The notes beneath the pieces were generated by a model. The model ran no database searches. It had not been told where the DNA came from and was given only the letters and a program-made list of their open reading frames with translations. The translations under genes and the position numbers were made by a program. A stretch of DNA of 63,476 bases, filler included, from Intoshia linei (taxonomy: Eukaryota; Animalia; Orthonectida), in NCBI GenBank assembly GCA_001642005.1. It is 6 parts of 6 records of this genome, joined end to end, with 100 filler letters (N's around TTAATTAATTAA, not from the genome) between each part and the next. Parts side by side here need not be neighbours in the genome. Positions count along the whole stretch, not along the records: positions 1 to 16,546 come from LWCA01000876.1; 5 more parts are not named here. One strand, given 5' to 3'. Each line of letters opens with the position of its first letter. Position 1 is the stretch's first letter. Below are positions 1-29,815 of this stretch, one piece after another.

Positions 1-124
1 GCAAAATATTTGTTGAAATTTTTATCAATATTAATAATAAATTTAGAGAAACTGTTCTAATATATTCAACAAAATAAAATTCAGGGCGATCTTATTTAAT
101 GATCTAATTAGTGAGCCAATAATT

Positions 125-448
125 ATGTTAATTATGTTAACTCCTCAAATCCTTAAAAGTAGACACCTCCTATGTAATGAAGAAAAAACTAAACATCATG
201 TTGTTAGCAGGAAAAATAAGGATGGTTCCTGGAGAAAGTGTAAATACCTTGTATCCAAGCTAAATACTGATGATGACATAATAGACAGAACATCTCTAAC
301 AAATAACGCCATGAATAACCTGAGTCAAGTATGGAAAAGTAACCTACCTATAAATACCAAAATGATAATCTTTAATGCTATAGCTTTTCATTTGTATGGG
401 TCTCATGCAGATCCTCGAAAAAAGTTTTCATTTTGTTGTCTAGTGTAA
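125..448 (+). pseudogene. Non-LTR retrotransposon reverse transcriptase fragment
   Basis: CKYLVSKL...DIIDRTSLTNNAMNNLSQVWKSNLPINTKMIIFNA resembles the LINE RT thumb region (FKYLGS..I..RI..A..AF..L..IW....K..IF); truncated. Confidence 0.65.
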
Positions 449-1181
449 TAGTAGAAACTATTTATTTTATAAGTAATTTTATGCAAACAAATCAATTTTT
501 GAAGTTGATAATATCAAATCAGGATTAATTTTAATAAATGTATCATTCAAATGCAATTAATGTAACAATAATGATATAATAATAACTATAGAATTCTAAT
601 TAAAATTTTAATCAAGTATTATTTTACGATGATATATTGATAAAAATTAAATAATTTACATATTTATTACATACTCAAAGGACTCAAAATAGGTCTTAAA
701 ATTAAAAAGTCTGCCCTCGACAAAACTAGCTACTTTTTGTATGAAATAAATAACGGTCAAATTATTTTCAATATAAAAGTAAATAAATATTTTTATAATG
801 TATAAATAATTACATCTATAAATTAATATAATCCATCATAATGAGTATATTTTAATTTGGTTAAGATAAAAAAATCATACATGGACGGTTTTTGTTTATG
901 TTTAATCTGATTTTGCAAAGTTGCGATGGAACAGTACTACATGTATAAAAGTATCGGAATTCAATAATTATTGAATTCATTAGATTATAATCTAATGACA
1001 CCGTGACGAATAATTTATAAACTTTGTTTTTATCTTTGCGTTTTTATTATGTATTTTAATATAGTAACCCTCTTACATTGTAACGCAGTTCTTCTCAAAG
1101 AGGTTCGCTATGTAGCAGGGATTCACCGCTAAATTTAGTAAGTTTATTTAGATAAATAAGTTTAAAATCTAAATTAACTAG

Positions 1182-1502
1182 AACAACGAAAATATCAGAC
1201 CGTAAGTAAAAATACATTCTTTATTTAAACATGTAGGCTTTATTTTAAAAAAATATAAACAGTTTTTAGTACATGTAGTGTATTGTCTCGAAGTTTAAGT
1301 AAATTGTTTAGTCTTAAGTTTTATATTAAATTAATGCATTGATTGATGTTGATTTAATTGATAGTCGTGTTTAATATAATTTTTAGATTGAATACATGAT
1401 TGTTCATTTTGACGATAAAAATAGAAAAGCTCAATTTTCACTTAAATCCCCAGAAATTAGAGAATATTTTGGAAATATTGAACAAAAATATGCAGCTAAA
1501 GG
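1182..1502 (+). CDS. Exons of an unknown gene (partial)
   Basis: Micro-exon 1182-1201 (..QRKYQT, donor gtaag) and AG/GT-bounded exon 1387-1502 (IEYMIVHFDDKNRKAQFSLKSPEIREYFGNIEQKYAAKG); start and end not resolved. Confidence 0.35.
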
Positions 1503-1717
1503 GTATTTTTTTGATATTTCAATTAGGATTTTTTAATTAAGATTATGCACACATCATTTATATGTACAGATTATTTATCTTTTAAAATTGTCTAACGTAA
1601 TGTTTTAAAAATGTATTTAATATTATTTTTTTTGGCCGAGTTCCATGATATTGTTTAGTTAGGATTGGATTGGGATGGATCATCAATTCTGTAACATTAT
1701 TTTTGATTCATCTGACC

Positions 1718-2117
1718 CAGTGTTTCTCAACCTTTTTTACTGCGCAGAACCTTTATGAAAATTCAAAAAATCGCGGCATCTAAAAGCATGATCAAAATTT
1801 TTTTTCGCATGTCGAATATATAAAACAATTTGATTTTTAATTAAAAAATTACGCTTCTAATATTGAAAACACATAAATTTTTTAATAATGAAATGTATTT
1901 ATCTTTCTCAATGAGAAATTTTGGCCTGATATTTTTTACAGAATTTTTATACATTAGACATTATATTTAATTTTTATTAAAGAATATATTTAACTTAACA
2001 TTAACTTAACTTAAACTTAAAAACAACAGTAATTTAGAAAAACATTAAATTGAAAAATATCGCATTTATATTTCACGGAACCTCTGGGTTCCGCGGAACA
2101 CGGGTTGAGAACCACTG
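1718..2117. mobile_element. hAT-type MITE
   Basis: TIRs cagtgtttctcaacc / ggttgagaaccactg; perfect 8-bp TSD ATCTGACC at 1710-1717 and 2118-2125. Confidence 0.9.
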
Positions 2118-3517
2118 ATCTGACCAAATAACCTTTTTTCATAGTGCGTTTGGTTCTTTAATAAAGGATAGTTTTTTCGCTTAAACTTTTAGATATAAAT
2201 TTTAGCTATCTAATTTATTGAATTTAGTAGCATTTATTACATTTGCCTAATATTTTGGCACACTTGAAAATTTAAAAAAATAATGATATGTTTTTGTTAT
2301 TAATAATAACAAATAACTTCTATATTATTGATATGAAAGAGTTTTTGTTGGAAATTAACTATTTATTTTTTTAATATAAATTGAGAATCAATTAAAAGTT
2401 AATTAATGCCGAAAAAATATAAGTTTTGATATAATTAAAATTAATTACACAACTTTTAGTGATTTGCATAATAATTTTGCAGTGTGTTTGTTATTATTCA
2501 AAGAGTCATCATACGAAATACATTAAAACCAAACATTATTATTAATATTCAATTATATTAATTATCTAAATTAAATTATCTAAATTAAACATACGTTAGT
2601 ATTTTTAGGTCTTGTTTTTTGACATACTTATGATCAGGGATTGAAAATAATTGATTGCAATCAATTATTTTGTATAAAGTAATTAATTGTTTGCTAAATA
2701 TTAATTTTCAATTAATTGGTTTTTTTCGTATAACTGAAAAAAAAATAAATTGAATCCTTTTATTGACGAATGATTGGATGAAAAAATTAATTAAATTTTT
2801 TTATGTAGTTCAAAAATTAAATTAATAATTATACAATATTAAGGTGTCAAGTTGATGGCTAGGGGCTAGGTTCGAATCAAGATTTGAACATATTTTTATT
2901 TAAGATGAACTTATCTGAGTTCTTATCTGCCAATCATTACAAACTTCAAGTTATCAAACACTCGTTACTACAGTATAAATAGGAACATAATTATGTTTAA
3001 ATGGTTAAACCAGTTAATAAACCGATTCAATGGTTTATGGTTCTGAACCAAACCAAACCATGAACAGGTCTAGTTTGCAATCAATTAATTCCAATCCAAG
3101 AATTTAAAATAAAAATAAATTTTTTTTGATATATTTTTCAATTTTTCTGCTTATACAAATTGATCAATAAAAAAAATTCTAGAAACCTTTGAAAAGAGCC
3201 AAACCTTGAGGGAATACTCGAGTATAGCCTAAATAATTTACGGTATGAATATTTTGAAATCGATTAAATATACAATAAGTATAATAAATATATATAAATG
3301 TAAATTTACATTGTAGACTTTTGGCAAAAAACAATGAATGGTAAAAATAAGACAAAGATTAATCACAAAGTTGAAAGAAATGTCAAACAAAATAAACAAC
3401 CAATACATTTTAATTTTATTATAAATGAAATGGCATAATTTAGACTAATTGGGATAAATTTGTAACAAACATAAAATTAGTGACAAGTGTAAATATGTAC
3501 AAAATTTCTTGGAAAGG

Positions 3518-4759
3518 TTAATCTACAGAAATATTGTTGATGGCGTCATTATGAGTAATAGAAGAAACGTCCAATTGCGTCAAGGAAGTATTAAATGATT
3601 CCGTTATTTGGTTATATTCAAATTTCTCTGGTTCGTCATTTTTGCTTTGAGAATCAGTATCATACGTGCCATTAGTTTGTGTTTCCTGCAATTCAATGTA
3701 GCTACCATTTTGTTTTTCTGGTTCAATTTGATCATTGATAAATTTAATTCTCAAAAATTCGTGCGGGTTTCGAATAATTGGTGTAGATTTATTAGTAGGT
3801 TTTTGACCATTTGTATGTATATTGATGGAACACGGACACACCATGCATTTGTGTTTGAACGAAATATTATAAAAAATTGCTCCTTTAGAATCAACATTCT
3901 TAAAAACAGAAGGAGTTCCAATACTGCTAAAATCTTCAACATTGTTATTTTCCACGTCTTCGATAGTTAAATGTTTCTTAATGTGCGTTTTGCATTTATC
4001 GCGACGATAAAAACTCCTCTGACAAAATCGACACGCGAATCGTCTCAATCCGGTATGAATGGGTCTATGACGTAAGAGGCTACTCTTTATGGTAAAAAAT
4101 TTGCCGCAATCGTGACAAATGTACGAATAATGCAAGTCCATACAATGTTTGAAATACACATTAACACCGTTCATTACTAATTTACACTGAGTGCATTTAA
4201 TACTTCCGCTAATATTTTCACCTTCTCCGAGATATTCACCGATTTCTTCCAAATTAAACCTACTATCCGCAGTTTTCCGTTTTTTCGGCTTGATAAAACC
4301 TTGCTCGCTTTGATAACTCATATTGATCGAATTTTCTCTAGTTAACTCTGCCGTCTCCTCCATGTCGACTTTATTGTTGACTGGAATATATTCTTGGGAT
4401 TGAACATGTATATATTTCCTTTTAGGTAACTCAGAAACAGTGGTCCCATTGTTGAAATCATCAACAGATAATTGAAAAATTGGTTTTTTCTGTACAGAAT
4501 TGACACTATAGGTACCATTACAAATATTGAACTTTAAAGGTTTTGAACGTTTCCGTTTATTCCGAATTAACAAATTTGACACAAATTTTGAATTCGATGA
4601 CAAAGATTTTTCCAATTTAAGACACATTTCGCTATTATCGTCAATTTTAATAGCAAAAGCGCCCAAAAGATTCAAATCCTTCATATACGGTATATTTGCT
4701 TTACAAAGATCGACTATAGCCTCACCAATATTTGAAGCATTTTGCGTAAGGTTTGCCAT
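3518..4759 (-). CDS. C2H2 zinc-finger transcription factor (uninterrupted CDS)
   Basis: Three C2H2 fingers (CTQC..H..H, CHDCGKFF..LLRHRPIH, TGLRRF linker, CRFC..H..H); 413-aa ORF. Confidence 0.9.
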   Translation of the reverse strand: MANLTQNASNIGEAIVDLCKANIPYMKDLNLLGAFAIKIDDNSEMCLKLEKSLSSNSKFVSNLLIRNKRKRSKPLKFNICNGTYSVNSVQKKPIFQLSVDDFNNGTTVSELPKRKYIHVQSQEYIPVNNKVDMEETAELTRENSINMSYQSEQGFIKPKKRKTADSRFNLEEIGEYLGEGENISGSIKCTQCKLVMNGVNVYFKHCMDLHYSYICHDCGKFFTIKSSLLRHRPIHTGLRRFACRFCQRSFYRRDKCKTHIKKHLTIEDVENNNVEDFSSIGTPSVFKNVDSKGAIFYNISFKHKCMVCPCSINIHTNGQKPTNKSTPIIRNPHEFLRIKFINDQIEPEKQNGSYIELQETQTNGTYDTDSQSKNDEPEKFEYNQITESFNTSLTQLDVSSITHNDAINNISVD

Positions 4760-5802
4760 TAAAGATTGATAAATGATCTAAAATTTACATTAAAGTAAAG
4801 AAACATAAAATGAAACTTTTCGTTCATGATTATAAAAAATTTTGTAAATGTTGAAAAACACAATCTTGGTAATATCATATCTTGGTAATCAAATGGGCTA
4901 ACTACGTTATTGTGTGTTGGTAATATCTATAAACCAATATTTGTTTACATAGATACTAGGGATAATTTTAACATTTGGGAAAAATCATTTTAAATATGTC
5001 AATAAAGTCGTACAGTATAAAGTACTCGCAAGTTCAAGTTTTACAAATTCACTAAAATTTTAAATTTAATTTAAAAATACCAAATTCAGTAGGATATATT
5101 GAGCACTTTATAAAAAATAAATTGATTAAATTTTAGTCCCGCCACAAGTAACAAGGCTTCGTGTTAAAATGTGTATCTATAGTTTTCACATTCTGTACAT
5201 TCACACTATTGCAATTACCATAATTCCTAGTATGTCACATTTAGCAGACTCGATCTAAAAGCACAAAGGAATACCAGTCACCATGCTACAAAAGTATTAT
5301 CTGCGCCATAAAAATATCATGTTGATAAGCAATGCATGCAACCACTACAGTGCACTGTAATTACAAGTTGATAAGGTTAGGCAGAGCCAGATAACGATTA
5401 CATTGAGATGTACAATGTGCGTTCAATGCCCAAGAAAGATAAACTACTGAATTTTACTGAATCACAATTTGTGATATCTTCGATACATCATTGTTTTGCC
5501 TAAATTTCATTATCGCTTTAAGGAATTTTAAACTTTGATATCTAATTCATTTATTGGAATTTAGGTTATTAACTAATGTTACAATTATTATTTATTCCCA
5601 TAAACTATTGGGAATAAGTAAACTTGAAAGTATGTTAACATCAAAGATCAAACCATTACATTTGCATGTATTTGAATTCAGTGACACGGACAATGTCATC
5701 CATTCACTATTCATAATTGTCGCACCCACACTGAAACGATTTAATAAAAATTGTAGTCAATATTTACTAAAATGATTATATTACAAAGCGATGGAAGTAA
5801 AA

Positions 5803-8430
5803 TTATCTGAATCGTTTTCTGGGAGGTTCTTCATATCTTCTATAACCGCGTCTTGCATTCCTATTCTCGTGTCTGTCAGCATTTCTCTTGTATAAATCCT
5901 GATAAGGAACATTGCGTCCATCATTTGGATATTCTAATCTACTTTTGACGTTCGGTCTGGGATTAACCTTGTAATCTGAAAACATATTTTGTTGGCGGTT
6001 AATTATTTCGTCTATCCTTATAGGTCGCTTAAAAAGGTGAATGCCGTTCAAAGTTTGCATTGAATAATGAACACTGACTTTGTCTATAAATTCCACAAAA
6101 CCTTTATTTACATGTTCTGTATCTTTTTCTACCTTGACCATCGATAAGGGAGCAATCTATTAAATATATATTATAGAATTACAACAATGTATTATTATAC
6201 TTATTATATTTTTAAATACTAACGGTGCTTTCACTTTTTTAGTAAAATTCAAAATTTGGTCATTTTTTTAAGTGATTTAAAAAAATTAAGATCTCTAAAC
6301 GCTAATTTTTTCGTTAAATATAAATACAGGAAAATGAATGTGAATTCAGGTTTAAATTAATTAATTAAACTTTAATTGGTACTGAATATTGCAGTTTTTC
6401 TCGTCGGTGCATACATCAAAATGTAAATATACAAATTTACTTAGCAAAAAATTCTGACAAATGTGAATGTATCTTTATTTTACAATACGGGTCCAAAAAT
6501 AGAAGCGGTTCAAAAAAAAAATTCATTTAATGCAGGGATGGGTAACCTTTTGCGTCTCGTGGGTAACTTTTTTATATCAAAACATTTTACAGGTACCGTT
6601 TTTGAAAATTTACATATGATACATTTAAATTTCAACTGAAGAGAAACAGTTCTAGTATATTTGAAATAACATCCAGGGCAATCTGAAAATTCAAAATTAA
6701 AATGATTATGAGCCAATTATAGTAGAAAATGTTTAAAACTGTGTTTAACCCTTACGAGACAATTTCATGTATAAATTCCAAAAACTACACTCATAAATTG
6801 ACATTGGTTTGTATACAAAACAAAAAAAGGCGGTACCACTATAAATTATGAACAAATTACTGCTCATACCATAAGATGTAATATGCATAAAAATTAATTT
6901 TATTATAAATGTTTACTTCGTGCCAACAATAAAATAAATTACAGTCAACCCTCTATAAGATGAACCCCTATAACGTGAACTTCTCCAATAATCAACAACT
7001 CAAAAAATTTGTTAGTTTACTATGAAAAAAGTAAATTAATCCTGAACATTCTACTACGTGAACGATGAACATGATTTATCGAAATTAAAATGAAGTTCTT
7101 ATTGTTATTCCCAATTATTGTATACAAAACGTGCTTTTCGAAAAATTTTTATTTTTGCAACATTAACAAAGAAAATTTAAAAAAAGATTAAAGATTTAGC
7201 TGCATCTACAAAAAAATAACTAATTCGTTTGTTTGATGAAGACAAACGTAGTACACAACGTTTTCTTGCTTCAAAACACAATGTATACAATAACCATTGA
7301 AAAAAATATTACATATGAAGAAAATCAAATGTCTGAACTTAAAGACCCAGAAATCTTACCTGTTACCCATTATGAAGCTAATAATCATGCTAACAAATTA
7401 CAAACATTTTTTATGATTCATAACCCAGAAAAATTATCAAGTGTATGAACTTTAATGCAGGAAATAAAGTCTGAAAAATTGGCAAGATTATCAAAAATAA
7501 TTGATTACTTTGGTTCTACCAAAGAAAGAAAAAAATGAATTGATATAATTATTATAATAGTGTTAATTATTTATTTATCTTTGTATAATGTAAAAGACTT
7601 ATATATATAAATAAGTTAAATATTTTTTTGTGAATTAATATCATATCAACTTTAATGTTACGATATATTTTATTGCTAATTCTAAGCCAAATTTAAGTTG
7701 TTCACTTTACAGATCAATGACATTTGAAATTTCTGAATTTTAAGCTTTAAATTTTAGTGTTTTTTTCAAAACTTCAAAAGTGAAATTTTTTGCTTTCATT
7801 TTTGAAAATCAGCAGTCTCGTCATGGTTAAAAGTTGAAAAATAAATAAAATACGTATTTACTCAAATAACCACCAAAATTATTATAAGTCATTTTTGGAC
7901 TGCGGGCCACTGGTTGCCGACTCCCGATGTAATGTAAGGTTTTAATTCAGTAATTCTAAAAAAAGAACATTAAAATTAACGTGTGCGAAATACCCTTTTC
8001 TGTTAATGTAGAAATGAATTACTCTATTTCAACTTATCATAAACATTTTATCTTGGTCCTTTAATTTTTATAAACATGAAATATAAAATGAAAATTTTTA
8101 ATTTTTTATCATAAGATTTGGTAAAATCGTTTTTCAAAAAAATATTGGAAAAAAGTGATATTTCCATAAGGTTTGGTTAAATTGGTTTTTTATATTGTAG
8201 TTAATTTAAGTAGATTTTTCAAAAAATTTTGTGGTAATCTGCATTTGGAACCTGTAACTATTTGCAAAAAATATTAAATTAACTCACAAATTAAAAAAAT
8301 CAAAAGTACAACTCAATAATAGAACATAAAAAATAAAAACCTGCAAAAATAATTCAAATAGTATATCTTCTGTGACATCTTTATCCAAATTATAAACACA
8401 TACTGATTTATCAACATCCAAGTACGACAT
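5803..8430 (-). CDS. RBM7: RNA-binding protein 7 (NEXT complex RRM protein); 2 exons 8430-8341 and 6156-5803
   Basis: MSYLDVDKSVCVYNLDKDVTEDILFELFLQ|IAPLSMVKV..GFVEF..SVHYSMQTLNGIHLFKRPIRI matches the RBM7/RBM11 RRM (VTEELLFELF..AGP...VPYAMNLLNGIKLYGRPIKI); phase-0 GT-AG intron filled with TEs. Confidence 0.8.
6749..7826. mobile_element. piggyBac-like non-autonomous element
   Basis: TTAA|cccttacgagac ... gtctcgtcatgg|TTAA. Confidence 0.7.
6942..7720 (+). mobile_element. pogo/Tigger-like deletion derivative
   Basis: TA|cagtcaaccctctataa left TIR; ORF remnant 7233-7448 and ..KIIDYF resemble a pogo transposase C-terminus; right end degenerate. Confidence 0.5.
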
Positions 8431-9024
8431 TTTCAATTAAATTTATTACGAAATAACAATTCAACTTAATTTTTCAATTGCACTATCCTTTACATAGAAA
8501 CGTAATCTGAATCAATATTTAATAAGTTATTTTTATCGGTTCTTAAATTATTAATCTGATGTATATTGCCCTGTATCTTTTCCTAAAGTCGCAGACTACA
8601 AGTAGTTTTAATAATTTTTTACCTAATTAGTTTACGGATTTAACTTTTTGCATTAAGATTCGAGGTTAACGATATTTTTTCATTATAGGTTCTTCAATTT
8701 TTATATATTACTAATGTACTAATAACAGAATATGACTAAGGTTTATCAGCTGCGTTACAATCGTTACATCAGCATATAAGAAATTTTTAGACTCAACAAT
8801 TTTATGGGTGTAAATAAATGCATTCATAAGTAATCTAATGGTCTTAGGACAATGACCATGCCGCTGTCCGGTTTGCCGTACTCACGAACAAAGGACTACG
8901 ATATAAATTTTAACGAAAAACACGATAATTGTAATTTACAACGAATTAATTATTAATTAATTATCGTACACAATACGTCTCCATGTAACAGTTGCATAAA
9001 CGACAATAAATAAAATAAAAAATA

Positions 9025-9033
9025 GCGCGAAAA
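9025..9033 (-). promoter_or_regulatory. E2F-like site upstream of CDT1
   Basis: TTTTCGCGC on the minus strand about 100 nt upstream of the CDT1 ATG, in the RBM7/CDT1 divergent interval; CGCG is rare in this AT-rich DNA. Confidence 0.5.
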
Positions 9034-9130
9034 TAAAGTTTTACAATAAAAGAAAACATTTGTACATAAATTTTGCATTCGCTATCAAGCAAACAACAAT
9101 CAAATTGAAAAAGCATTGATAAATTTTAAA

Positions 9131-11579
9131 ATGGATAAAAAAGCGAATCAAATGAAACAAACCAATATGGAAAATTACTATGTAAACTCTAAAGTTATTC
9201 GACCACAACAGTCCAAAACTTTACTTTTGGATGACAAAAAGAGGACTCCGAAACGACAAAATAAAATTAAAAAAAGTTGTAAACCGGTTAAAAAAATGAA
9301 TGAAAAATCCAACACAATTAAACAAAAAATTGATACTGGCAAACGCAAACCTTTAAAAATTGACCCTGTTAAAGTCAAAAATGCTCTCAAGAAATGTACA
9401 AACCTAAATGAATTGAAAAGTAAATTGATTCAATTTGATAAAAATGTTATACAGTCCGAAATTGGATATAGTTCACCAAATTTTCATCAAGACGATAATA
9501 TCGTTTCCATTTTAAACAAAAGTCCCTTAAAAAAAGCCATGCACAGTAAAATATCTTTTAATAAATCTGTCTCTCGCAAATTGGATTTTTCTAGGTATTA
9601 CATTATTCTTATATTACGAGAATCCAAAATATATTTTTTATAGATGTGAAATTAACGAATCAACCAGTTCAAAATTTGCTAGTTTGACTTCACTTGATAA
9701 TTTGCCAATGCCCATCAAGTTTAGTAATTTATTGGACACTTTTAAAACTTTGGATACTGTGTTGGGTATGTTTGGTCAACGAAAGGAAACTGCCACTTTT
9801 GGTCGTATCAAAAGTGTTGTTGAAAGGATGACAAGAAGGTTTTTATTTTAATTTTATATTGATTACAAATCACTATAATCTTCATTATCATGTATGTTTG
9901 CATAGCCCCGTCTGCAAAGTATCACACCTTAAAAACGAAAGATATTTTTGTATTCAAGGGTTCATGATAATTGGCTTTGAAAATTCATGAATTAAACAAA
10001 TAAAATACTAATATACAATCATTCATGTTATTTTATCTGTCATTGCATCTGTTGCTTTTAATTTAATATTAATTTTAGAAATTTTACAAAAAAGGCTATA
10101 TATCAAATTGTTACAGTTTTTCCTGAAGCATATATAGTGGAACAAATTAAAAATATTCCATTGCCATCTTGTATAGAACCATCCTCTGAATATCAATTGT
10201 GTATTAGATATAAAAATGGTAATTTTAAAAGCATCAAATAAGTATTTCAAGCATGGTGCTTAGATTTTTTTCCATCTAAGAAAATTTATAAATTAATTAT
10301 AAATATTATTTAAAACTTATTAATCATTAATTTGGTACTGATCCAAATAATTTGCTTCAGTGTCACTTGAAGAAAACCCCAATTTAAATTTTTTGCAAGA
10401 GTTTACAGAAAATGAATTATTTACAATTTAAATTAAATTAATAGAACCGATTGATAAGTTGTGCGATTATTACAAGAGAAGAAAGATACAATTTCACGAA
10501 ATGTTGTTGGAACGAGTGTATACAGCTCATGATAATTTTTTACAAAAAGTTTCCAAAAAATTGAAGGTAGATATCAAAGTGGATAAGACGGATATTATAA
10601 GATGGCATGTTGATTTTATGCCAGATAAACATGTTGAAGATATTGAGGAAGCTGAGCATATTCAATATAAAAATCAAAAAGTTTTAAAAACTGCAGATCA
10701 GGTCCTGTCAGAAATTTCAAAGCAGTGTTTCACCAAAAAAGTAATTTTTAATTTAATACGGAAATGGTAGGTGGGCGTATAGCATTAAAAACATTCAATT
10801 TTAAGAGGTGAAAAATCGTAGGAAGTAGCATTAATTAATGTTAAAAGGCTTAAAAATTGATATGTAATAATGTAGCTTAACCAGTTTGGTATAAAGATCC
10901 GTACCCTGTCTGTGATCGGTAAAATAGGGAAATTTTCAAATATATTTGACCCTTGAATTGAGGCCGTCATAAAATTATCACACGTGATGCTAGTTTAACA
11001 AAAAAGTAATTTAATATTTTTAACAATTTATAATTTTAGATGCAAGAAGCTTATAAAATGGCTGAAATCATTAGAAAATGTTCGCTAAAATCAGATAAAC
11101 TTGATACAATCCAAGAAAAAACTATTGAATCAAAAGACCTGGATAAAAAATACAAAGGCATATCGAAAAAACTGTTAAACAAGGTTAGATCGACACAAGC
11201 AGCAAAAACATATGTAGATATGACTCGTAATAGTTCAGCACAAAAAATGATTAGCAAATATTCCAATGTACCAGAAATTGCGAGAATTATCCGAGTTTTC
11301 TTCATTCTAAACAAAACGAAATGCTTACCATACAGCCAAGTCATTAATAAAATTATGGACAGTCTACCAAATTCAATCTCAGAAGGTTTTTAAAAATTTT
11401 TTTAATAATTTGTCATCATAGATGAAATACATTCATCTCTAGAAGCTTTGATTCAAGTTTATTCTGAATGGATATCATTTGTGCAGGTCAACAATGTAAA
11501 ATATGTAAAAACTAGCAATATTACTATGAACTATGCTGATTTATTAGGAAAAATCAACGCTATTAAAAAAACATTTTAG
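9131..11579 (+). CDS. CDT1: DNA replication licensing factor Cdt1 (multi-exon)
   Basis: N-terminal PIP box QTNMENYY; LPMPIKFSNLLDTFKTLDTVLGMF..RKETATFGRIK; IIRWHVDF..VEDIEEA; YKGISKKLLNKVR..DMTR..VPEIARIIRVFF; final exon ..EWISFVQV..YVK..; stop at 11577-11579. Confidence 0.93.
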
Positions 11580-11643
11580 ATTTTTATATAATTTGTGTAA
11601 ACGTTTAATAACATTTATAAATATTTTAACCGTACTGACTTTA

Positions 11644-14600
11644 TTACAATTCATCTGATTCTTTATTTGGTTCATCTGTTTCTTCACAATTCATTATTGT
11701 CTACATTTTAATGTAATATTAATTGCTTTAGTTTTAGTTTAAAAAAATTTAAACCTTGATAGTTTCCGCAAAATGCATTGTAGCTTCACATAATTTTTTC
11801 AATTTAACATTTTCTGTGTTTAACTTTTTTGATTCTTCTATTAACTATAAAATTTTAATCAACTGAGTTCATATTCTATATATGGTTCTCGTGCGCGGGT
11901 CCATTATGCCATTTTTGTGAAAAAAATTTCATTGATACTATCAAATGTAGTTTAAACCAGGCATTCTCAACCCTTTTTTAGCTGTGGACCCCAAAAAAAT
12001 TAATAATACAGTCCAACCTCGGCGTGGGGATACTCGGTTTTTGGCGAACTTTTTCAGAATTATGTTAATTTTATAGTATTTAAATCGATGGCATAGCAAT
12101 ATATGTGAAATTAACCCCGCTTTTGGGGCAAAAATGTTGTAAATACATAAGAATAATAAGTATAATTTCTACAGTGATGACATTAAATTAAAAATTATAT
12201 TTATTTGAATATTTTACATACATTTTCATATGTATTTATCAGAATTCATTCATTTTTCATTATGCCTATATTTTAATATGATAAATTATTAATTACTATT
12301 CTAGATTAGAAAGTAACTATAATTCTAAAAATTAAGTATATAATTTAAAAAATATTCATAACTTTGATTTGAGATTTTTATTATATTTTGTTTTTCAGGT
12401 ATTTACCTGAAAATGTCACCCTAAACCGTGTTGGACTCTAATAGAAACAAATATATCATAATATATTGCAATAGTTTAAATATTCAATGAAAAATTAGAT
12501 AACTTACTAAAACCCCTGTTTTTGGGACACTTCAAAAAATGGTGCCCCAATCCGAGGTCCGACTGTAATGACAATGAATCATTACATTTAAGTGAAACGA
12601 ATGATGGTCAAAAGACATGGAGTAATCTATTTTTGCGAGATGATAAACTTGATAAACTATTAATATTAACCTTTAACCCGTCAATGTTCCCAAAATAGAA
12701 CATGTTTTTCAGGTATTGTTTACAGTACATTATTAATTGTTTACTACATATTTTATCAGATCAATAAAAAGTTTATATTATCTATCTTCCCTGTGAAAAA
12801 TTAATATTTTATATCCTTTGGTTGATGTTTCATAAAATCATAAATATTGACTGATTTTTTGTCCCATTTTCAATTTGAAATTTAAAGCTTTTTTTATGAC
12901 TAGAAACTTGGCTCGGTCATAAATTTTAATAAAGTAATTAAATAAAACCGCTGCTCCTAAAATAGAACAATGGAGGTTTTCTAATAAGTTTTTACACTTG
13001 TAAGTAATTTAATTTAATACCAAAGAATTTACTTTTACATGATTTGCACGTTTTATATTAGTATTTCTGAGCCTTTATGTTTTAAAANCTTGGTTGATGT
13101 TTCATAGAATCATGAATATTGACTGATTTTTTGTCCCATTTTCAATTTGAAATTTAAAGCTTTTTTTAAGACTAGAAACTTGGCTCGGTCATAAATTTTA
13201 ATTAAATCAAAACGCTGCTCCTAAAATAGAACAATGGAGGTTTCCCAATAAGTTTTTACACTTGTAAGTAATTTAATTTAATACCAAAGAATTTACTTTT
13301 ACATGGTTTTTACGTTATATAATTAGTATTTCTGAGTCTTTATGTTTTAAAAACGACTTTATGTTATTGAAAATGTTTATAATATGTAATAAATGTATAT
13401 AATTTTCATGGACCCCAAAAAAGTGCTGTGGACCCCGTTGAGAATGGCTGGTTTAAACTATATATTATTGTAGACTAAAAATTAGTTTTTGATACATGAA
13501 GGCCTCAATTTCATGGAATAAAATTTGCTATAAAAAATTACTTGAAAAGCTACAGAATTCTCTATAACTCACCATTCTTGAGATTTCAAAAAAGTTGGTA
13601 AGATAGAGAATTTAAAATATAGAAACCTTCAAATTAAAAATTTAATACAAAATGATTAAAATGTAATTTATCAAAAAATTCATTTTTAAATTAATTATTT
13701 TCTAAAAATTACATTTTAATTAATAAATGGGTTTACTAAATAGTAAATCAGTAAATAGAATATAAACAATTTTTTGTAAGCGCAATATATATCCCTTTTT
13801 AAATGTATTATTCATCTGCTTTATTAAACCTTCTTTTGCGATTTAGAAGCCTTTTAAATTTCAATGTGATTTAAAACTTAAGTAATAAAATTGTAACTAA
13901 TTTTGACAAATGGTTTTAAAACTTTTAGTTTTATATTTTAAATTAATGGCGAGTTATAGAATAAAATGTTAATATTTATATATTACAGTAATAACTATAT
14001 GACGAGTTGTGGAGAGAACAGATTTAAACCTTTAGCAGATTTAGGCCCTTTAAGCAGAGCAATTTATGATTTATATATGGGCACAACAAAAATAAGAAAC
14101 GGAAACTAAAGTGTTCAACTAAGTTAATCTGAAACTCGGGAAACTATTCTATCTTGGACTTGTAAAACTTATAAAATGTATTTCATTTCAAAAGTTTTGA
14201 TTACGATTTTGGCGACTTTGTACATAATCAAAATACAAAAATTACACAGTACATTCAAAATTGGATGAACTATTAAAATTAACTAACGGTTACAAATTTT
14301 TTTTTAAATTTAATGTTGTTACTCACACAGCTGTGAATCTGAAAATATTGGTGGTATGTACATTGTACACTAGAGGTGTGATTTTGTATACTTTTTTTCG
14401 AAATTTCATGGTCCAAATACTGATAAAGTTGCGTGTGATAGTTTCATGATAATCAAAAAATTTACTTTACTTTTTATTGTTTTTACTATTTTTTAATATA
14501 CGCATAACAAATTGGTACAGTGTGTATATTATAGTAAATTAATTTGCTCATGAGTTTAAACTTTAAAGTAATCAATATTAATCTCAAATACACTTTATAT

Positions 14601-14922
14601 ATCAATGAATAGGAACAATTTGTAAACATTTAAAATCAAAATTTTCATGTGCCCGAGCTGGAAACCCGTTCTATATTAGAAAGTTACCGTTTCGTTGCGT
14701 TCCAATTCTGTGGATAAAGATTTTTTTAAATTATCGCATGATTCTTTCCAGTAAGTTGGTTTATTTAAATTTTCTAAATAAAAAAAAGATAATTTATTTA
14801 TCGATTATGTACTAGTCATTTCAGATTTACATTTGTTACAGTATTGTTCATGCTAGAGAAAATTTTGTTTATTTATAATAATAATTAATTGCCTTCATTT
14901 GTTTGGTTTTTAAATTAGACAT
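11644..14922 (-). CDS. GMNN: Geminin-like coiled-coil protein, 100 aa; exons 14922-14893, 14852-14813, 14773-14688, 11844-11755, 11700-11644
   Basis: Spliced ORF MSNLKTKQMK HEQYCNKCKSEMT KNLNKPTYWKESCDNLKKSLSTELERNET LIEESKKLNTENVKLKKLCEATMHFAETIK TIMNCEETDEPNKESDEL*. YWK..(R/K)..L...L..NE.L...EN..L.......AE.I plus an acidic tail matches the geminin coiled coil; all phases are consistent; intron 1 is GC-AG. Confidence 0.75.
11958..13450. mobile_element. hAT non-autonomous element in geminin intron 3
   Basis: TIRs caggcattctcaac / gttgagaatggctg; perfect TSD GTTTAAAC at 11950-11957 and 13451-13458. Confidence 0.88.
12009..12565. mobile_element. Tc1/pogo-type MITE nested in the hAT element
   Basis: TA|cagtccaacctcgg..ggg ... 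cccc..ccgaggtccgactg|TA. Confidence 0.75.
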
Positions 14923-14949
14923 TTCCAAATAATTTGGTAAAATTTAAAA

Positions 14950-14956
14950 TTCGCGC
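14950..14956. promoter_or_regulatory. E2F-like site upstream of geminin-like gene
   Basis: TTCGCGC 28 nt upstream of the predicted ATG. Confidence 0.4.
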
Positions 14957-16179
14957 AATTATCGTCTCGTAAATTAAGTTAACATCTTTAGTGGTGTCAC
15001 TATCGTATCAGTACGTAGATTCATTACATTCAATGCAATTACGTTTATATGCAATGCTTTTTTTCCATTATTATTTATTTTATAAAAATTATAGCTCATT
15101 TTATCATAGAGGCGCTCATTTATAAATTTATGTATTATATTGGAATGGTGGCGTTAGTTTAAAAAGATTGAGAACCCCTGATTTAGATGACGAGAAAATA
15201 GGTACAAGCATGAACGATACTATTGAAATTAAGTCGGTTAAGTTAATATTTATCTCGAAATACCGAAATTTTTTTATTTTTTTCACCGGTGATGGTCCGT
15301 CGATCTGAACTTGTGAACCATTGAGTTAACTTATCGTTAAGAAAATAACGTATATTCAATGATGGGTAGGTCAACAATTTATTCAAATAAAACAATCAAT
15401 TTTTGTAAAGATTCATCTGAACAACCTTTAACCAGAAATAAATCTTTTAAATCTAAAATAAATAGTAATACATGAACCAAATTAAATTACATCTTAGAAT
15501 GTAGCTTTTATTTTCAACAAATATTTCATATTGTGCAAAAAGATTTTGTACATTATTATTTTTATCAAGATTCAAGTTACTTTGCATTAAAATACAAATA
15601 TATTTATGAATTGCATTCAACATGGCATCATAAGCACAAATTATTGGATTCATTACATTTCCAGGTATCAATAACCTACAAAATCAAAAATATAATTCAA
15701 AGATCTCTAAATTTTCATATACGGAATCCGTACTACGGACCCAAGTTTTCAATACTTTCTGGTGTTAATTAAAATTAATAACTGAAATGTACTTTTTTTT
15801 AAAAAATACGCGGGATAAATACATAATTTTCAATTTAAATGTACCAACCTAGATCCCTACACCGGCCGAATTTCTTACCCACCCGTGTCATCAAAATTTG
15901 GCATTTGTTCATGATTCATGACCACTAGCCTCTCCAATTTTCGATATATTATCCATTACACATTGACGGGAAAGGTGAAAATTGATACAAAAAATCATTT
16001 AGGTACAAATAAATAAATGGTATATTATTTTTAATTGGGCCCTCTATACTCATGCGTCAACATTTTTAAAATTTTTTTTCTGGTGATTCTCTAGTTGGAC
16101 CACGAGCGTGGAGAGGGTTATATGGCCCGGGCTACAATCATGAGGGCCTACTTTTTTAATTAATATTCTTAATTAAAAA

Positions 16180-16325
16180 GGGTGTCTACTTAAATCCAAC
16201 TATTTTTACTTAAATCTAATTTAAAACTGTAATTTTCTCTAAAGGGTTTTTAAAATCGAATTTTTCCTTTTAGTGTTGGTAAATTTTGATTTTTAGTAAA
16301 AATGGTTAGATTTAAGTAGACACCC
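16180..16325. mobile_element. Palindromic MITE (relative at ~22632-22860)
   Basis: TIRs gggtgtctacttaaatc / gatttaagtagacaccc; internal ttggtaaaat-type repeats shared with 8115-8250, 18000-18170 and 28895-29110. Confidence 0.7.
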
Positions 16326-16546
16326 TTTTATTAATTTATTAATAGTTAATATTGGAAAATTTCATAAGTATACACTCCGTCCAATAATTATAACACTATC
16401 ATTTTGTTAATAACAATTATATTTGTAGATCAAAATTTATGAAAATTGGAATGTTGGGCATGCACAATGTAAGGTGGTCATATTAAAAAAATTAATTGAA
16501 AAAAAACAAAATTAACTAAAGTTTTTTAATAAAAACGTTAAAAATA

Positions 16547-24647: not shown

Positions 24648-29815
<5,168 letters not shown>

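What the first reader, a model, noticed from the sequence alone, without database searches (positions are those of the whole stretch)
9131..14922. Geminin-like gene hidden tail-to-tail with its target CDT1 (stop codons 64 nt apart)
Seen: five small minus-strand exons, none in the ORF track, splice in phase into a 100-aa protein containing YWKESCDNLKKSLSTELERNETL..ENVKLKKL..FAETIK and an acidic tail. Its stop (11644) faces the CDT1 stop (11579). Established: geminin is the metazoan coiled-coil inhibitor that binds Cdt1 to block MCM re-loading, and the two genes are unlinked in human. Inference: an inhibitor-target pair whose 3' UTRs probably overlap, allowing dosage coupling, antisense interaction or transcriptional interference. 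I know of no described Cdt1-geminin gene pairing.
Basis: partly seen in the sequence, partly recalled or inferred. Interest (0 to 1): 0.9.

Follow-up and report, generated by a model that had tools for sequence, protein, structure and literature searches.

The report
Divergent geminin paralog beside CDT1
The small spliced gene facing the replication-licensing gene CDT1 in the parasite Intoshia linei is real and belongs to the geminin family, but it is the most divergent of three geminin-like genes, and such tight tail-to-tail spacing is normal in this compact genome.

Summary
The window is contig C781 of Intoshia linei. Its plus strand carries the genome's only CDT1 gene (6 exons, 532 aa). Its minus strand carries a 5-exon gene whose stop lies 64 nt from the CDT1 stop. 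Spliced RNA-derived contigs from three runs show every junction of both genes. One contig runs unbroken from CDT1's last exon, across the spacer, into the minus gene.

The gene is not hidden. It is deposited as hypothetical protein OAF66631.1 (164 aa) with a different, unverified 5' end.

Geminin-family membership is supported but sub-threshold:
- Pfam Geminin is the top hit (E 0.003, 17.8 bits, below the 22.2-bit cut-off).
- The five best PDB hits are all Multicilin or Geminin.
- The protein-language-model atlas places it among Geminin clusters (0.95).

The genome has two more geminin-like genes. The C1724 copy fits canonical geminin far better and has a D-box-like motif; the window copy has none. 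That copy's stop is 14 nt from a convergent THUMP gene, and the third copy's is 137 nt from sestrin, so close spacing is ordinary here. Next-door placement of CDT1 and a geminin paralog is a real curiosity. No evidence here shows that it has a function or is conserved.

The parts
9131..9594 (+). CDT1 exon 1 (start ATG at 9131)
   Evidence: RNA contig joint to 9644, GT..AG; splice sites read.
9644..9838 (+). CDT1 exon 2, start of the CDT1 middle domain. It holds KFASL, aligned by eye (from memory) with the geminin-binding helices of mouse Cdt1.
   Evidence: Pfam CDT1 E 1.9e-9, profile positions 2-44; joints.
10079..10218 (+). CDT1 exon 3
   Evidence: Pfam CDT1 25.5 bits, profile positions 44-87; joints.
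10445..10740 (+). CDT1 exon 4
   Evidence: Pfam CDT1 E 2.5e-10, profile positions 113-168; joints.
11040..11385 (+). CDT1 exon 5 (C-terminal winged-helix domain)
   Evidence: Pfam CDT1_C E 4.3e-11; joints.
11422..11579 (+). CDT1 exon 6, stop TAG at 11577-11579. The six exons total 1599 nt (532 aa).
11580..11643 (.). 64-nt spacer between the two stop codons, covered without a break by RNA-derived contigs
   Evidence: Contig pieces 11420-11700 in X1, X2 and X3. Poly(A)-signal-like hexamers on both strands.
11644..11700 (-). Geminin-like gene exon 5: acidic tail and stop (TAA at 11646-11644). AATAAA overlaps the stop.
11755..11844 (-). Geminin-like gene exon 4: 30 aa, second half of the coiled coil, HFAE motif
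   Evidence: Joints 11700/11755 and 11844/14688, CT..AC. Same length and phases as the matching exons of the two paralogs.
14688..14773 (-). Geminin-like gene exon 3: YWKE motif and first half of the coiled coil
   Evidence: 16.6 bits to the profile of the other two paralogs; top of 1072 pieces in the window.
14813..14852 (-). Geminin-like gene exon 2 (HEQYCNKCKSEMT, then a split codon)
   Evidence: Joints; identical in OAF66631.1.
14893..14922 (-).
   Evidence: Joint 14852/14893 in X1 and X3; the X2 contig end is consistent with it.
15394..15653 (-). Alternative 5' exons used by the deposited 164-aa model OAF66631.1 (15653-15492 and about 15450-15394). No RNA check was made here.
   Evidence: tblastn of P0001 on the window.
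11936..13472 (.). Repeat element inside the 2.84-kb intron 3. It has 36-nt inverted ends and an internal tandem duplication of about 270 bp. It is not part of the coding model.
   Evidence: Many 90-95% identical contigs from elsewhere map here.

Best explanation
Region 9131-14922 holds two convergent genes of Intoshia linei that are both transcribed. One is the single-copy licensing factor CDT1. The other is a small gene (A3Q56_05596) for a short, divergent geminin-family protein. Its RNA-supported form is 100 aa: a 24-residue head, the YWKE segment that in geminin adjoins the Cdt1 contact, about five heptads of coiled coil, and an 18-residue acidic tail. It is one of three geminin-like genes in this genome. 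All three share three intron positions and lack the same heptad relative to vertebrate geminin, so they probably arose by duplication within this lineage. Shown here: the gene structure, its splicing, family resemblance, three paralogs, and single-copy CDT1. Inferred: the protein forms a parallel coiled-coil dimer, with itself or with the canonical geminin on C1724. Like geminin or Idas-geminin dimers, it would then bind the N-terminal helices of the Cdt1 middle domain and modulate MCM loading. It has no RxxL or KEN motif, so APC/C would probably not clear it in G1. The 64-nt spacing and the RNA continuity across it are most simply explained by genome compaction. Placement next to CDT1 may well be chance.
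For: CDT1 identity and single copy. All junctions in spliced contigs from three runs, with one contig spanning both genes. Searching with the single exon by reference retrieved the deposited protein P0001 = OAF66631.1 of Intoshia linei. For P0001, Pfam Geminin is the top hit (E 0.003, residues 69-148 against profile 85-171). The five best PDB hits are Multicilin and Geminin (E 0.01-0.26). Atlas features score 0.95 with 204 shared features, and all top family hits are Geminin. A profile of the YWKE-type exon from the three paralogs hits solved geminins at E 2.5e-6. A single heptad register runs across the exon junction, with Trp at position d as in geminin and Idas: and PMC4631479. Paralogs. 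Tight convergent spacing at the other two loci. Family members heterodimerise, and the Idas-geminin dimer binds Cdt1: PMC3814758.
Against: The Pfam score is below the gathering cut-off (17.8 vs 22.2 bits). Exon by exon, the window gene gives no Pfam or PDB hit. A profile built from the other two paralogs finds its YWKE exon only at E 2.3 genome-wide, no better than two chance hits, and scores its second coiled-coil exon at only 6.5 bits. Coiled coils attract spurious similarity. Binding to Cdt1 is not shown. GemC1, another family member, does not bind Cdt1 (PMC4631479). The naive chance of a geminin paralog lying next to CDT1 is below 1 in 1000, which argues somewhat against pure coincidence.
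Confidence: 0.6

Rival explanations
1. This is the organism's geminin, and the tail-to-tail pairing with overlapping 3' UTRs is a selected regulatory unit that couples inhibitor and target through dosage coupling, antisense pairing or transcriptional interference.
For: The geminin-family signal. CDT1 is single-copy and an immediate neighbour. RNA covers the whole spacer. Adjacency of this specific pair is unlikely by naive chance: about 2 neighbours x 3 paralogs out of roughly 9000 genes (gene number from memory).
Against: A better geminin orthologue exists on C1724, with a D-box-like motif and a near-threshold Pfam score from one exon. Stops 14 nt and 137 nt apart occur at the other two geminin-like loci, next to unrelated genes. 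Contigs give no strand, transcript ends or expression levels. Poly(A)-like signals would allow very short, barely overlapping UTRs. There are no conservation data.
Confidence: 0.1
2. An Idas-like modulator. The protein does not inhibit Cdt1 by itself. It acts by heterodimerising with the canonical geminin (C1724), weakening or redirecting it, as vertebrate Idas does.
For: Its best PDB hit is Multicilin/Idas. Geminin-family coiled coils prefer heterodimers, and Idas-geminin inhibits geminin's licensing function (PMC3814758). The window copy is the most divergent and lacks a D-box.
Against: Only 18 residues follow the coiled coil, so there is no room for the C-terminal domain of Idas/GemC1 (my recollection of that domain). 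The Multicilin and Geminin E-values are practically equal (0.010 vs 0.012). All three Intoshia copies share a heptad deletion, which points to a lineage-specific origin rather than Idas orthology.
Confidence: 0.2
3. An unrelated short coiled-coil protein whose resemblance to geminin is compositional chance.
For: All scores are sub-threshold. The leave-one-out searches are not significant genome-wide. Chance hits of 16-17 bits occur in an LRR gene and in non-coding DNA.
Against: Three independent methods rank geminin first. The match is collinear across two exons and in exact register with the exon ends. Three intron positions and phases are shared with the two clearer geminin-like genes. The YWKE Trp sits at heptad position d.
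Confidence: 0.1

Closest known systems
Geminin (GMNN; Pfam PF07412; structures 2ZXX, 2WVR, 1UII)
   Same: The YWKE motif precedes a parallel coiled coil, with the Trp at heptad position d. There is an acidic C-terminal tail. It is the top hit by Pfam, and solved geminins are among the five best PDB hits.
   Different: The protein is half the length (100 aa). It has no RxxL destruction box or KEN motif. Its coiled coil is one heptad shorter. The Pfam score is below the gathering cut-off. Cdt1 binding is untested.
Idas / Multicilin (MCIDAS; structure 4BRY chain B) and GemC1
   Same: These are divergent paralogs of geminin that share only the coiled coil and act partly through heterodimers with geminin. 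Multicilin is nominally the best PDB hit (E 0.01).
   Different: The window protein has no long C-terminal region after the coil. It shares a heptad deletion and intron positions with the other two Intoshia copies, so it is probably an independent, lineage-specific duplicate rather than an orthologue.
The two other Intoshia geminin-like genes (C1724:~2700-3430 minus; C2498:~26990-28700 plus)
   Same: Same exon architecture: a phase-1 intron before the (E)NPS/YWKE exon, a phase-0 intron after ENEK/RNET, a 30-aa second coiled-coil exon, and a phase-0 intron before a short acidic last exon. Each is convergent with a close neighbour.
   Different: They are 27-40% identical to the window copy in the two core exons. 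C1724 keeps ENPSxxFWKE, a VDFMTL segment and a D-box-like RTILREI. Their neighbours are a THUMP-domain gene and sestrin, not CDT1.

Membership tests
CDT1 (plus-strand gene) | Pfam CDT1 middle domain (PF08839) and CDT1_C (PF16679) above their gathering scores | tested here: met
   38.4 and 41.3 bits (cut-off 22.6) and 43.7 bits (cut-off 25) on single exons. These are the only CDT1 matches in the genome.
Geminin family (PF07412) | Pfam Geminin profile at or above the gathering score | tested here: not met
   P0001 scores 17.8 bits against a 22.2-bit cut-off, although Geminin is the top hit at E 0.003. The window exons alone give no hit.
Geminin family (PF07412) | Sequence similarity to solved geminin-superfamily coiled coils | tested here: met
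   The five best of 177,635 PDB sequences are Multicilin and four Geminin entries, E 0.01-0.26. The profile of the YWKE-type exon from the three paralogs hits geminin at E 2.5e-6.
Geminin family (PF07412) | Continuous heptad coiled coil with the N-terminal Trp at position d | tested here: met
   The best register over 58 residues puts W at d. Positions a/d are 65% hydrophobic against 22% elsewhere. The register in geminin and Idas is given in PMC4631479.
Geminin family (PF07412) | Independent (non-alignment) family assignment | tested here: met
   The atlas feature search scores 0.95 with 204 shared features, and 12 of 30 hits are Geminin clusters. The top structural neighbour is a putative Geminin.
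Canonical geminin (orthologue of GMNN) | N-terminal destruction box (RxxL) for APC/C-dependent removal in G1 | tested here: not met
The C1724 copy has RTILREI, read by eye.
Canonical geminin (orthologue of GMNN) | Best geminin match in its own genome | tested here: not met
   The YWKE-type exon against PDB geminin: C1724 E 9e-5, C2498 E 0.0045, window none. Pfam scores: 21.9 and 19 bits for single exons, against 17.8 bits for the whole window protein.
Canonical geminin (orthologue of GMNN) | Binds Cdt1 as a dimer and blocks MCM loading | tested here: inconclusive
   The complex prediction (P0001 residues 75-164 in two copies, plus the CDT1 exon-2 piece) gave no verdict. An experiment is needed.
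Idas/Multicilin and GemC1 | Extended C-terminal region after the coiled coil (the TIRT domain, from my own knowledge) | tested here: not met
   Only 18 residues follow the coiled coil before the stop.

The most novel reading that the evidence does not exclude
Intoshia has evolved a minimal geminin without a destruction box, and this gene is kept tail-to-tail with its target CDT1. Overlapping 3' ends would tie inhibitor and target expression together. This could hold Cdt1 inactive in the non-dividing cells of the adult or in the multinucleate plasmodium. It would be the first inhibitor-target gene pair of the replication-licensing system.
Probability: 0.1. Interest if true: 0.7.

Novelty: new member of a known kind. 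Interest (0 to 1): 0.35.

Why it matters
The finding gives a function-level annotation to a deposited 'hypothetical protein'. It also shows that one of the smallest animal genomes carries three geminin-like genes, where I would have expected a single one (as I recall for invertebrates; not checked here). If the divergent copy, which lacks a destruction box, binds Cdt1 or the canonical geminin, it would be an independently evolved counterpart of the vertebrate Geminin/Idas/GemC1 system. That could help explain how licensing is controlled in an organism with a syncytial stage and adults of fixed cell number. The CDT1 adjacency matters only if it proves conserved. On present evidence it is a curiosity in a gene-dense genome.

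Tried and rejected
- Exon-by-exon Pfam and PDB searches of the window exons gave no geminin hit.
- The own-genome scan with the Pfam Geminin profile did not pick the window locus at all. It found the two other loci.
- Leave-one-out profiles from the two other paralogs were not significant genome-wide for the window exons. The competing hits on C671 (an LRR gene) and C2952 were chance matches.
- The search for homologous proteins with P0001 residues 85-164 returned only itself.
- Complex prediction of the P0001 core (two copies) with the CDT1 exon-2 piece gave no verdict: score 0.02, and the partner folded poorly. This is not evidence either way.
- I could not obtain the full spliced CDT1 as a referenced protein, so the proper 2:1 complex was not modelled.
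- Whole-protein tests used the database protein P0001, reached by a single-exon search.
- Literature searches for CDT1-geminin synteny or orthonectid geminin found nothing relevant.
- P0002, the second hit, is an unrelated repeat protein.
Full report
WHAT THE SEQUENCE HOLDS

The usable piece (1-16546) is contig C781 of a 41.6-Mb, 26% G+C assembly. A protein retrieved later names the organism as Intoshia linei.

On the plus strand, six exons run from the ATG at 9131 to the TAG at 11577-11579. They are 9131-9594, 9644-9838, 10079-10218, 10445-10740, 11040-11385 and 11422-11579. All have GT..AG borders and together make 1599 nt.

On the minus strand, five short exons total 303 nt and read as 100 codons plus TAA. 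They are 14922-14893, 14852-14813, 14773-14688, 11844-11755 and 11700-11644. Introns 2-4 have canonical borders and intron 1 is GC..AG. Exactly 64 nt (11580-11643) separate the two stop codons.

RNA EVIDENCE

Three public runs from one study hold this locus as contigs with the introns removed, so they derive from RNA even though the record does not state the library type. In each run a single contig of 2272-2314 nt covers all six CDT1 exons with the five GT..AG joints. It continues without a break through 11420-11700, then shows the minus-strand joints 11700/11755 and 11844/14688 (CT..AC), 14774/14814, and, in X1 and X3, 14852/14893.

Three points qualify this.
- The aligner puts the 14774/14814 joint one base away from the canonical site (14773/14813). 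Both versions keep the frame and differ only in one residue (E or K). The deposited protein has K, and both paralogs have a phase-1 intron at the same place. I therefore take the canonical site.
- Contigs carry no strand, ends or abundance. The merged contig shows only that RNA reads tile the whole spacer, so at least some transcripts of one or both genes cross it.
- Poly(A)-signal-like hexamers would allow very short UTRs. These are ATTAAA at 11562 and TATAAA at 11616 on the plus strand, and AATAAA overlapping the stop at 11645 and ATTAAA at 11609 on the minus strand. The extent of overlap therefore remains open.

THE PLUS-STRAND GENE

Single exons score above Pfam's cut-offs for the CDT1 middle domain (E 1.9e-9 and 2.5e-10) and for CDT1_C (E 4.3e-11). 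A six-frame scan of the whole assembly with the CDT1 profile finds only these exons. CDT1 is therefore single-copy in this assembly.

THE MINUS-STRAND GENE

Tested exon by exon and by reference, the window exons give no Pfam hit and no geminin hit in the PDB. A whole-genome scan with the Pfam Geminin profile did not even select this locus.

Instead I searched with the 30-residue YWKE exon piece against 1.84 billion representative proteins. This returned P0001 (E 1.7e-10), which is OAF66631.1, 'hypothetical protein A3Q56_05596 [Intoshia linei]', 164 aa. Its first 74 residues come from two other exons (15653-15492 and about 15450-15394), which lie outside the stretch I laid reads on. So the gene is not hidden. 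It is deposited without a function and probably with a wrong or alternative 5' end.

With P0001 as query, several lines point to geminin:
- Pfam Geminin is the best family: E 0.003, 17.8 bits (below the 22.2-bit gathering score), residues 69-148 against profile positions 85-171.
- The five best PDB sequences are Multicilin and four Geminin entries, E 0.010-0.26.
- The protein-language-model atlas puts it among Geminin clusters, with score 0.95 and 204 shared features. Its nearest structural neighbour there is a putative Geminin.
- One heptad register runs across the exon junction for 58 residues, with the Trp at position d. This is the register reported for geminin and Idas (PMC4631479).

I rate superfamily membership at about 0.85, while noting that every alignment score is sub-threshold.

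TWO MORE GENES OF THE SAME KIND

The Geminin-profile scan found loci on C1724 and C2498. Reading them shows the same architecture as the window gene:
- an exon beginning in phase 1 and reading (E)NPSERFWKE...ENEK or (D)VPSEQFYKRK...YENEK;
- a phase-0 intron;
- an exon of exactly 30 codons ending ..EYFANVLN or ..EYFANILS;
- a phase-0 intron;
- a short acidic last exon.

The window gene has the same three intron positions and phases and the same 30-codon exon. All three lack seven residues, one heptad, relative to solved geminin, exactly at the junction of the two core exons. This suggests duplication within this lineage rather than orthology to vertebrate Idas and GemC1.

A profile of the three YWKE-type exons hits solved geminins at E 2.5e-6 and Multicilin at 0.016. 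Ranked on that exon alone:
- C1724: 21.9 bits to Pfam Geminin, E 9e-5 to PDB geminin;
- C2498: 19 bits, E 0.0045;
- window copy: nothing.

Upstream, C1724 also carries ...KRTILREI... (an RxxLxxI destruction-box pattern) and ...VDFMTL just before ENPS. I read both by eye, and they resemble the human geminin N-terminal features as I remember them. P0001 has no RxxL or KEN. So the canonical geminin orthologue is most likely the C1724 gene, and the window gene is the most divergent paralog. Leave-one-out profiles from the other two copies rank the window exons first within the window (16.6 and 6.5 bits). Genome-wide they reach only E 2.3 or worse, no better than two chance hits that I inspected.

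IS THE PAIRING SPECIAL?

The spacing is not special. The C1724 gene's stop lies 14 nt from the stop of a convergent THUMP-domain gene. The C2498 gene's stop lies 137 nt from the stop of a convergent sestrin gene.

The partner is what stands out. I recall roughly 9000 genes from the genome paper, a figure I did not verify here. On that basis, the naive chance that one of three geminin-like genes is an immediate neighbour of the single CDT1 is about 7 in 10,000. However, a scan of a whole genome for any adjacent pair of known interactors expects several chance cases. I could test neither conservation in other species nor strand-resolved expression. I therefore treat the adjacency as a curiosity, with about 0.1-0.15 probability that it is functional.

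MECHANISM

The most likely picture is inference from family knowledge. The protein forms a parallel coiled-coil dimer. It either binds the Cdt1 middle domain as geminin does, or pairs with the canonical geminin as Idas does; the Idas-geminin heterodimer binds Cdt1 and dampens geminin's licensing inhibition (PMC3814758). GemC1 shows that not every family member binds Cdt1 (PMC4631479). Without a destruction box, the protein would not be removed in G1 by APC/C, so its activity would have to be set by transcription or by partner choice.

One complex prediction, with the P0001 core in two copies plus the CDT1 exon-2 piece, gave no verdict and counts for nothing. The exon-2 piece holds KFASL, which I aligned by eye with the mouse Cdt1 primary-interface helices as I recall them from Lee et al. 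2004.

LIMITS

- The single read-laying run ended at 15000, so the annotated 5' exons are untested.
- No external geminin sequences could be obtained for a tree or a profile-profile comparison.
- No self-joined spliced model was searched.

Noticed in passing
L001 = G000:C1724:1573-4668 (gene on minus strand, locus coordinates about 1149-1858): This is probably the canonical geminin orthologue. It has a D-box-like KRTILREI, then VDFMTL, ENPSERFWKE..ENEK, a 30-aa coil exon ending EYFANVLN, and an acidic tail. Its stop is 14 nt from the stop of a convergent THUMP-domain gene (616-1134, plus strand).
   Followed up: partly
L002 = G000:C2498:26701-29808 (gene on plus strand, locus coordinates about 288-1997): This is a third geminin-like gene (DVPSEQFYKRK..YENEK, then ..AEYFANILS, then a short acidic tail). 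An intron of about 1.1 kb precedes the core exons. Its stop is 137 nt from the stop of a convergent sestrin (PA26) gene.
   Followed up: partly
window 11936-13472: The 2.84-kb intron 3 of the geminin-like gene contains an element bounded by 36-nt inverted repeats (11936-11971 and 13437-13472). It has an internal tandem duplication of about 270 bp (12818-13087 and 13090-13352). Many RNA-derived contigs at 90-95% identity map here, so it looks like a dispersed, transcribed repeat family.
   Followed up: partly
window 14853-14892 (minus strand): Intron 1 of the geminin-like gene has GC..AG borders rather than GT..AG. The joint is seen in contigs from two runs.
   Followed up: no
window 9143 and 11085: All three RNA-derived data sets differ from the assembly at these two positions in CDT1 (G>T and C>A). 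These are probably strain polymorphisms or assembly errors.
   Followed up: no
window upstream of 9100: The merged transcript contigs extend 312-339 nt beyond position 9100 on the CDT1 5' side. This could be a long 5' UTR, a further 5' exon, or overlap with an upstream divergent gene.
   Followed up: no
window 3518-4759 (minus strand): A single-exon 413-aa ORF with weak C2H2 zinc-finger matches. ORF 5803-6141 (minus strand) has no Pfam hit.
   Followed up: partly
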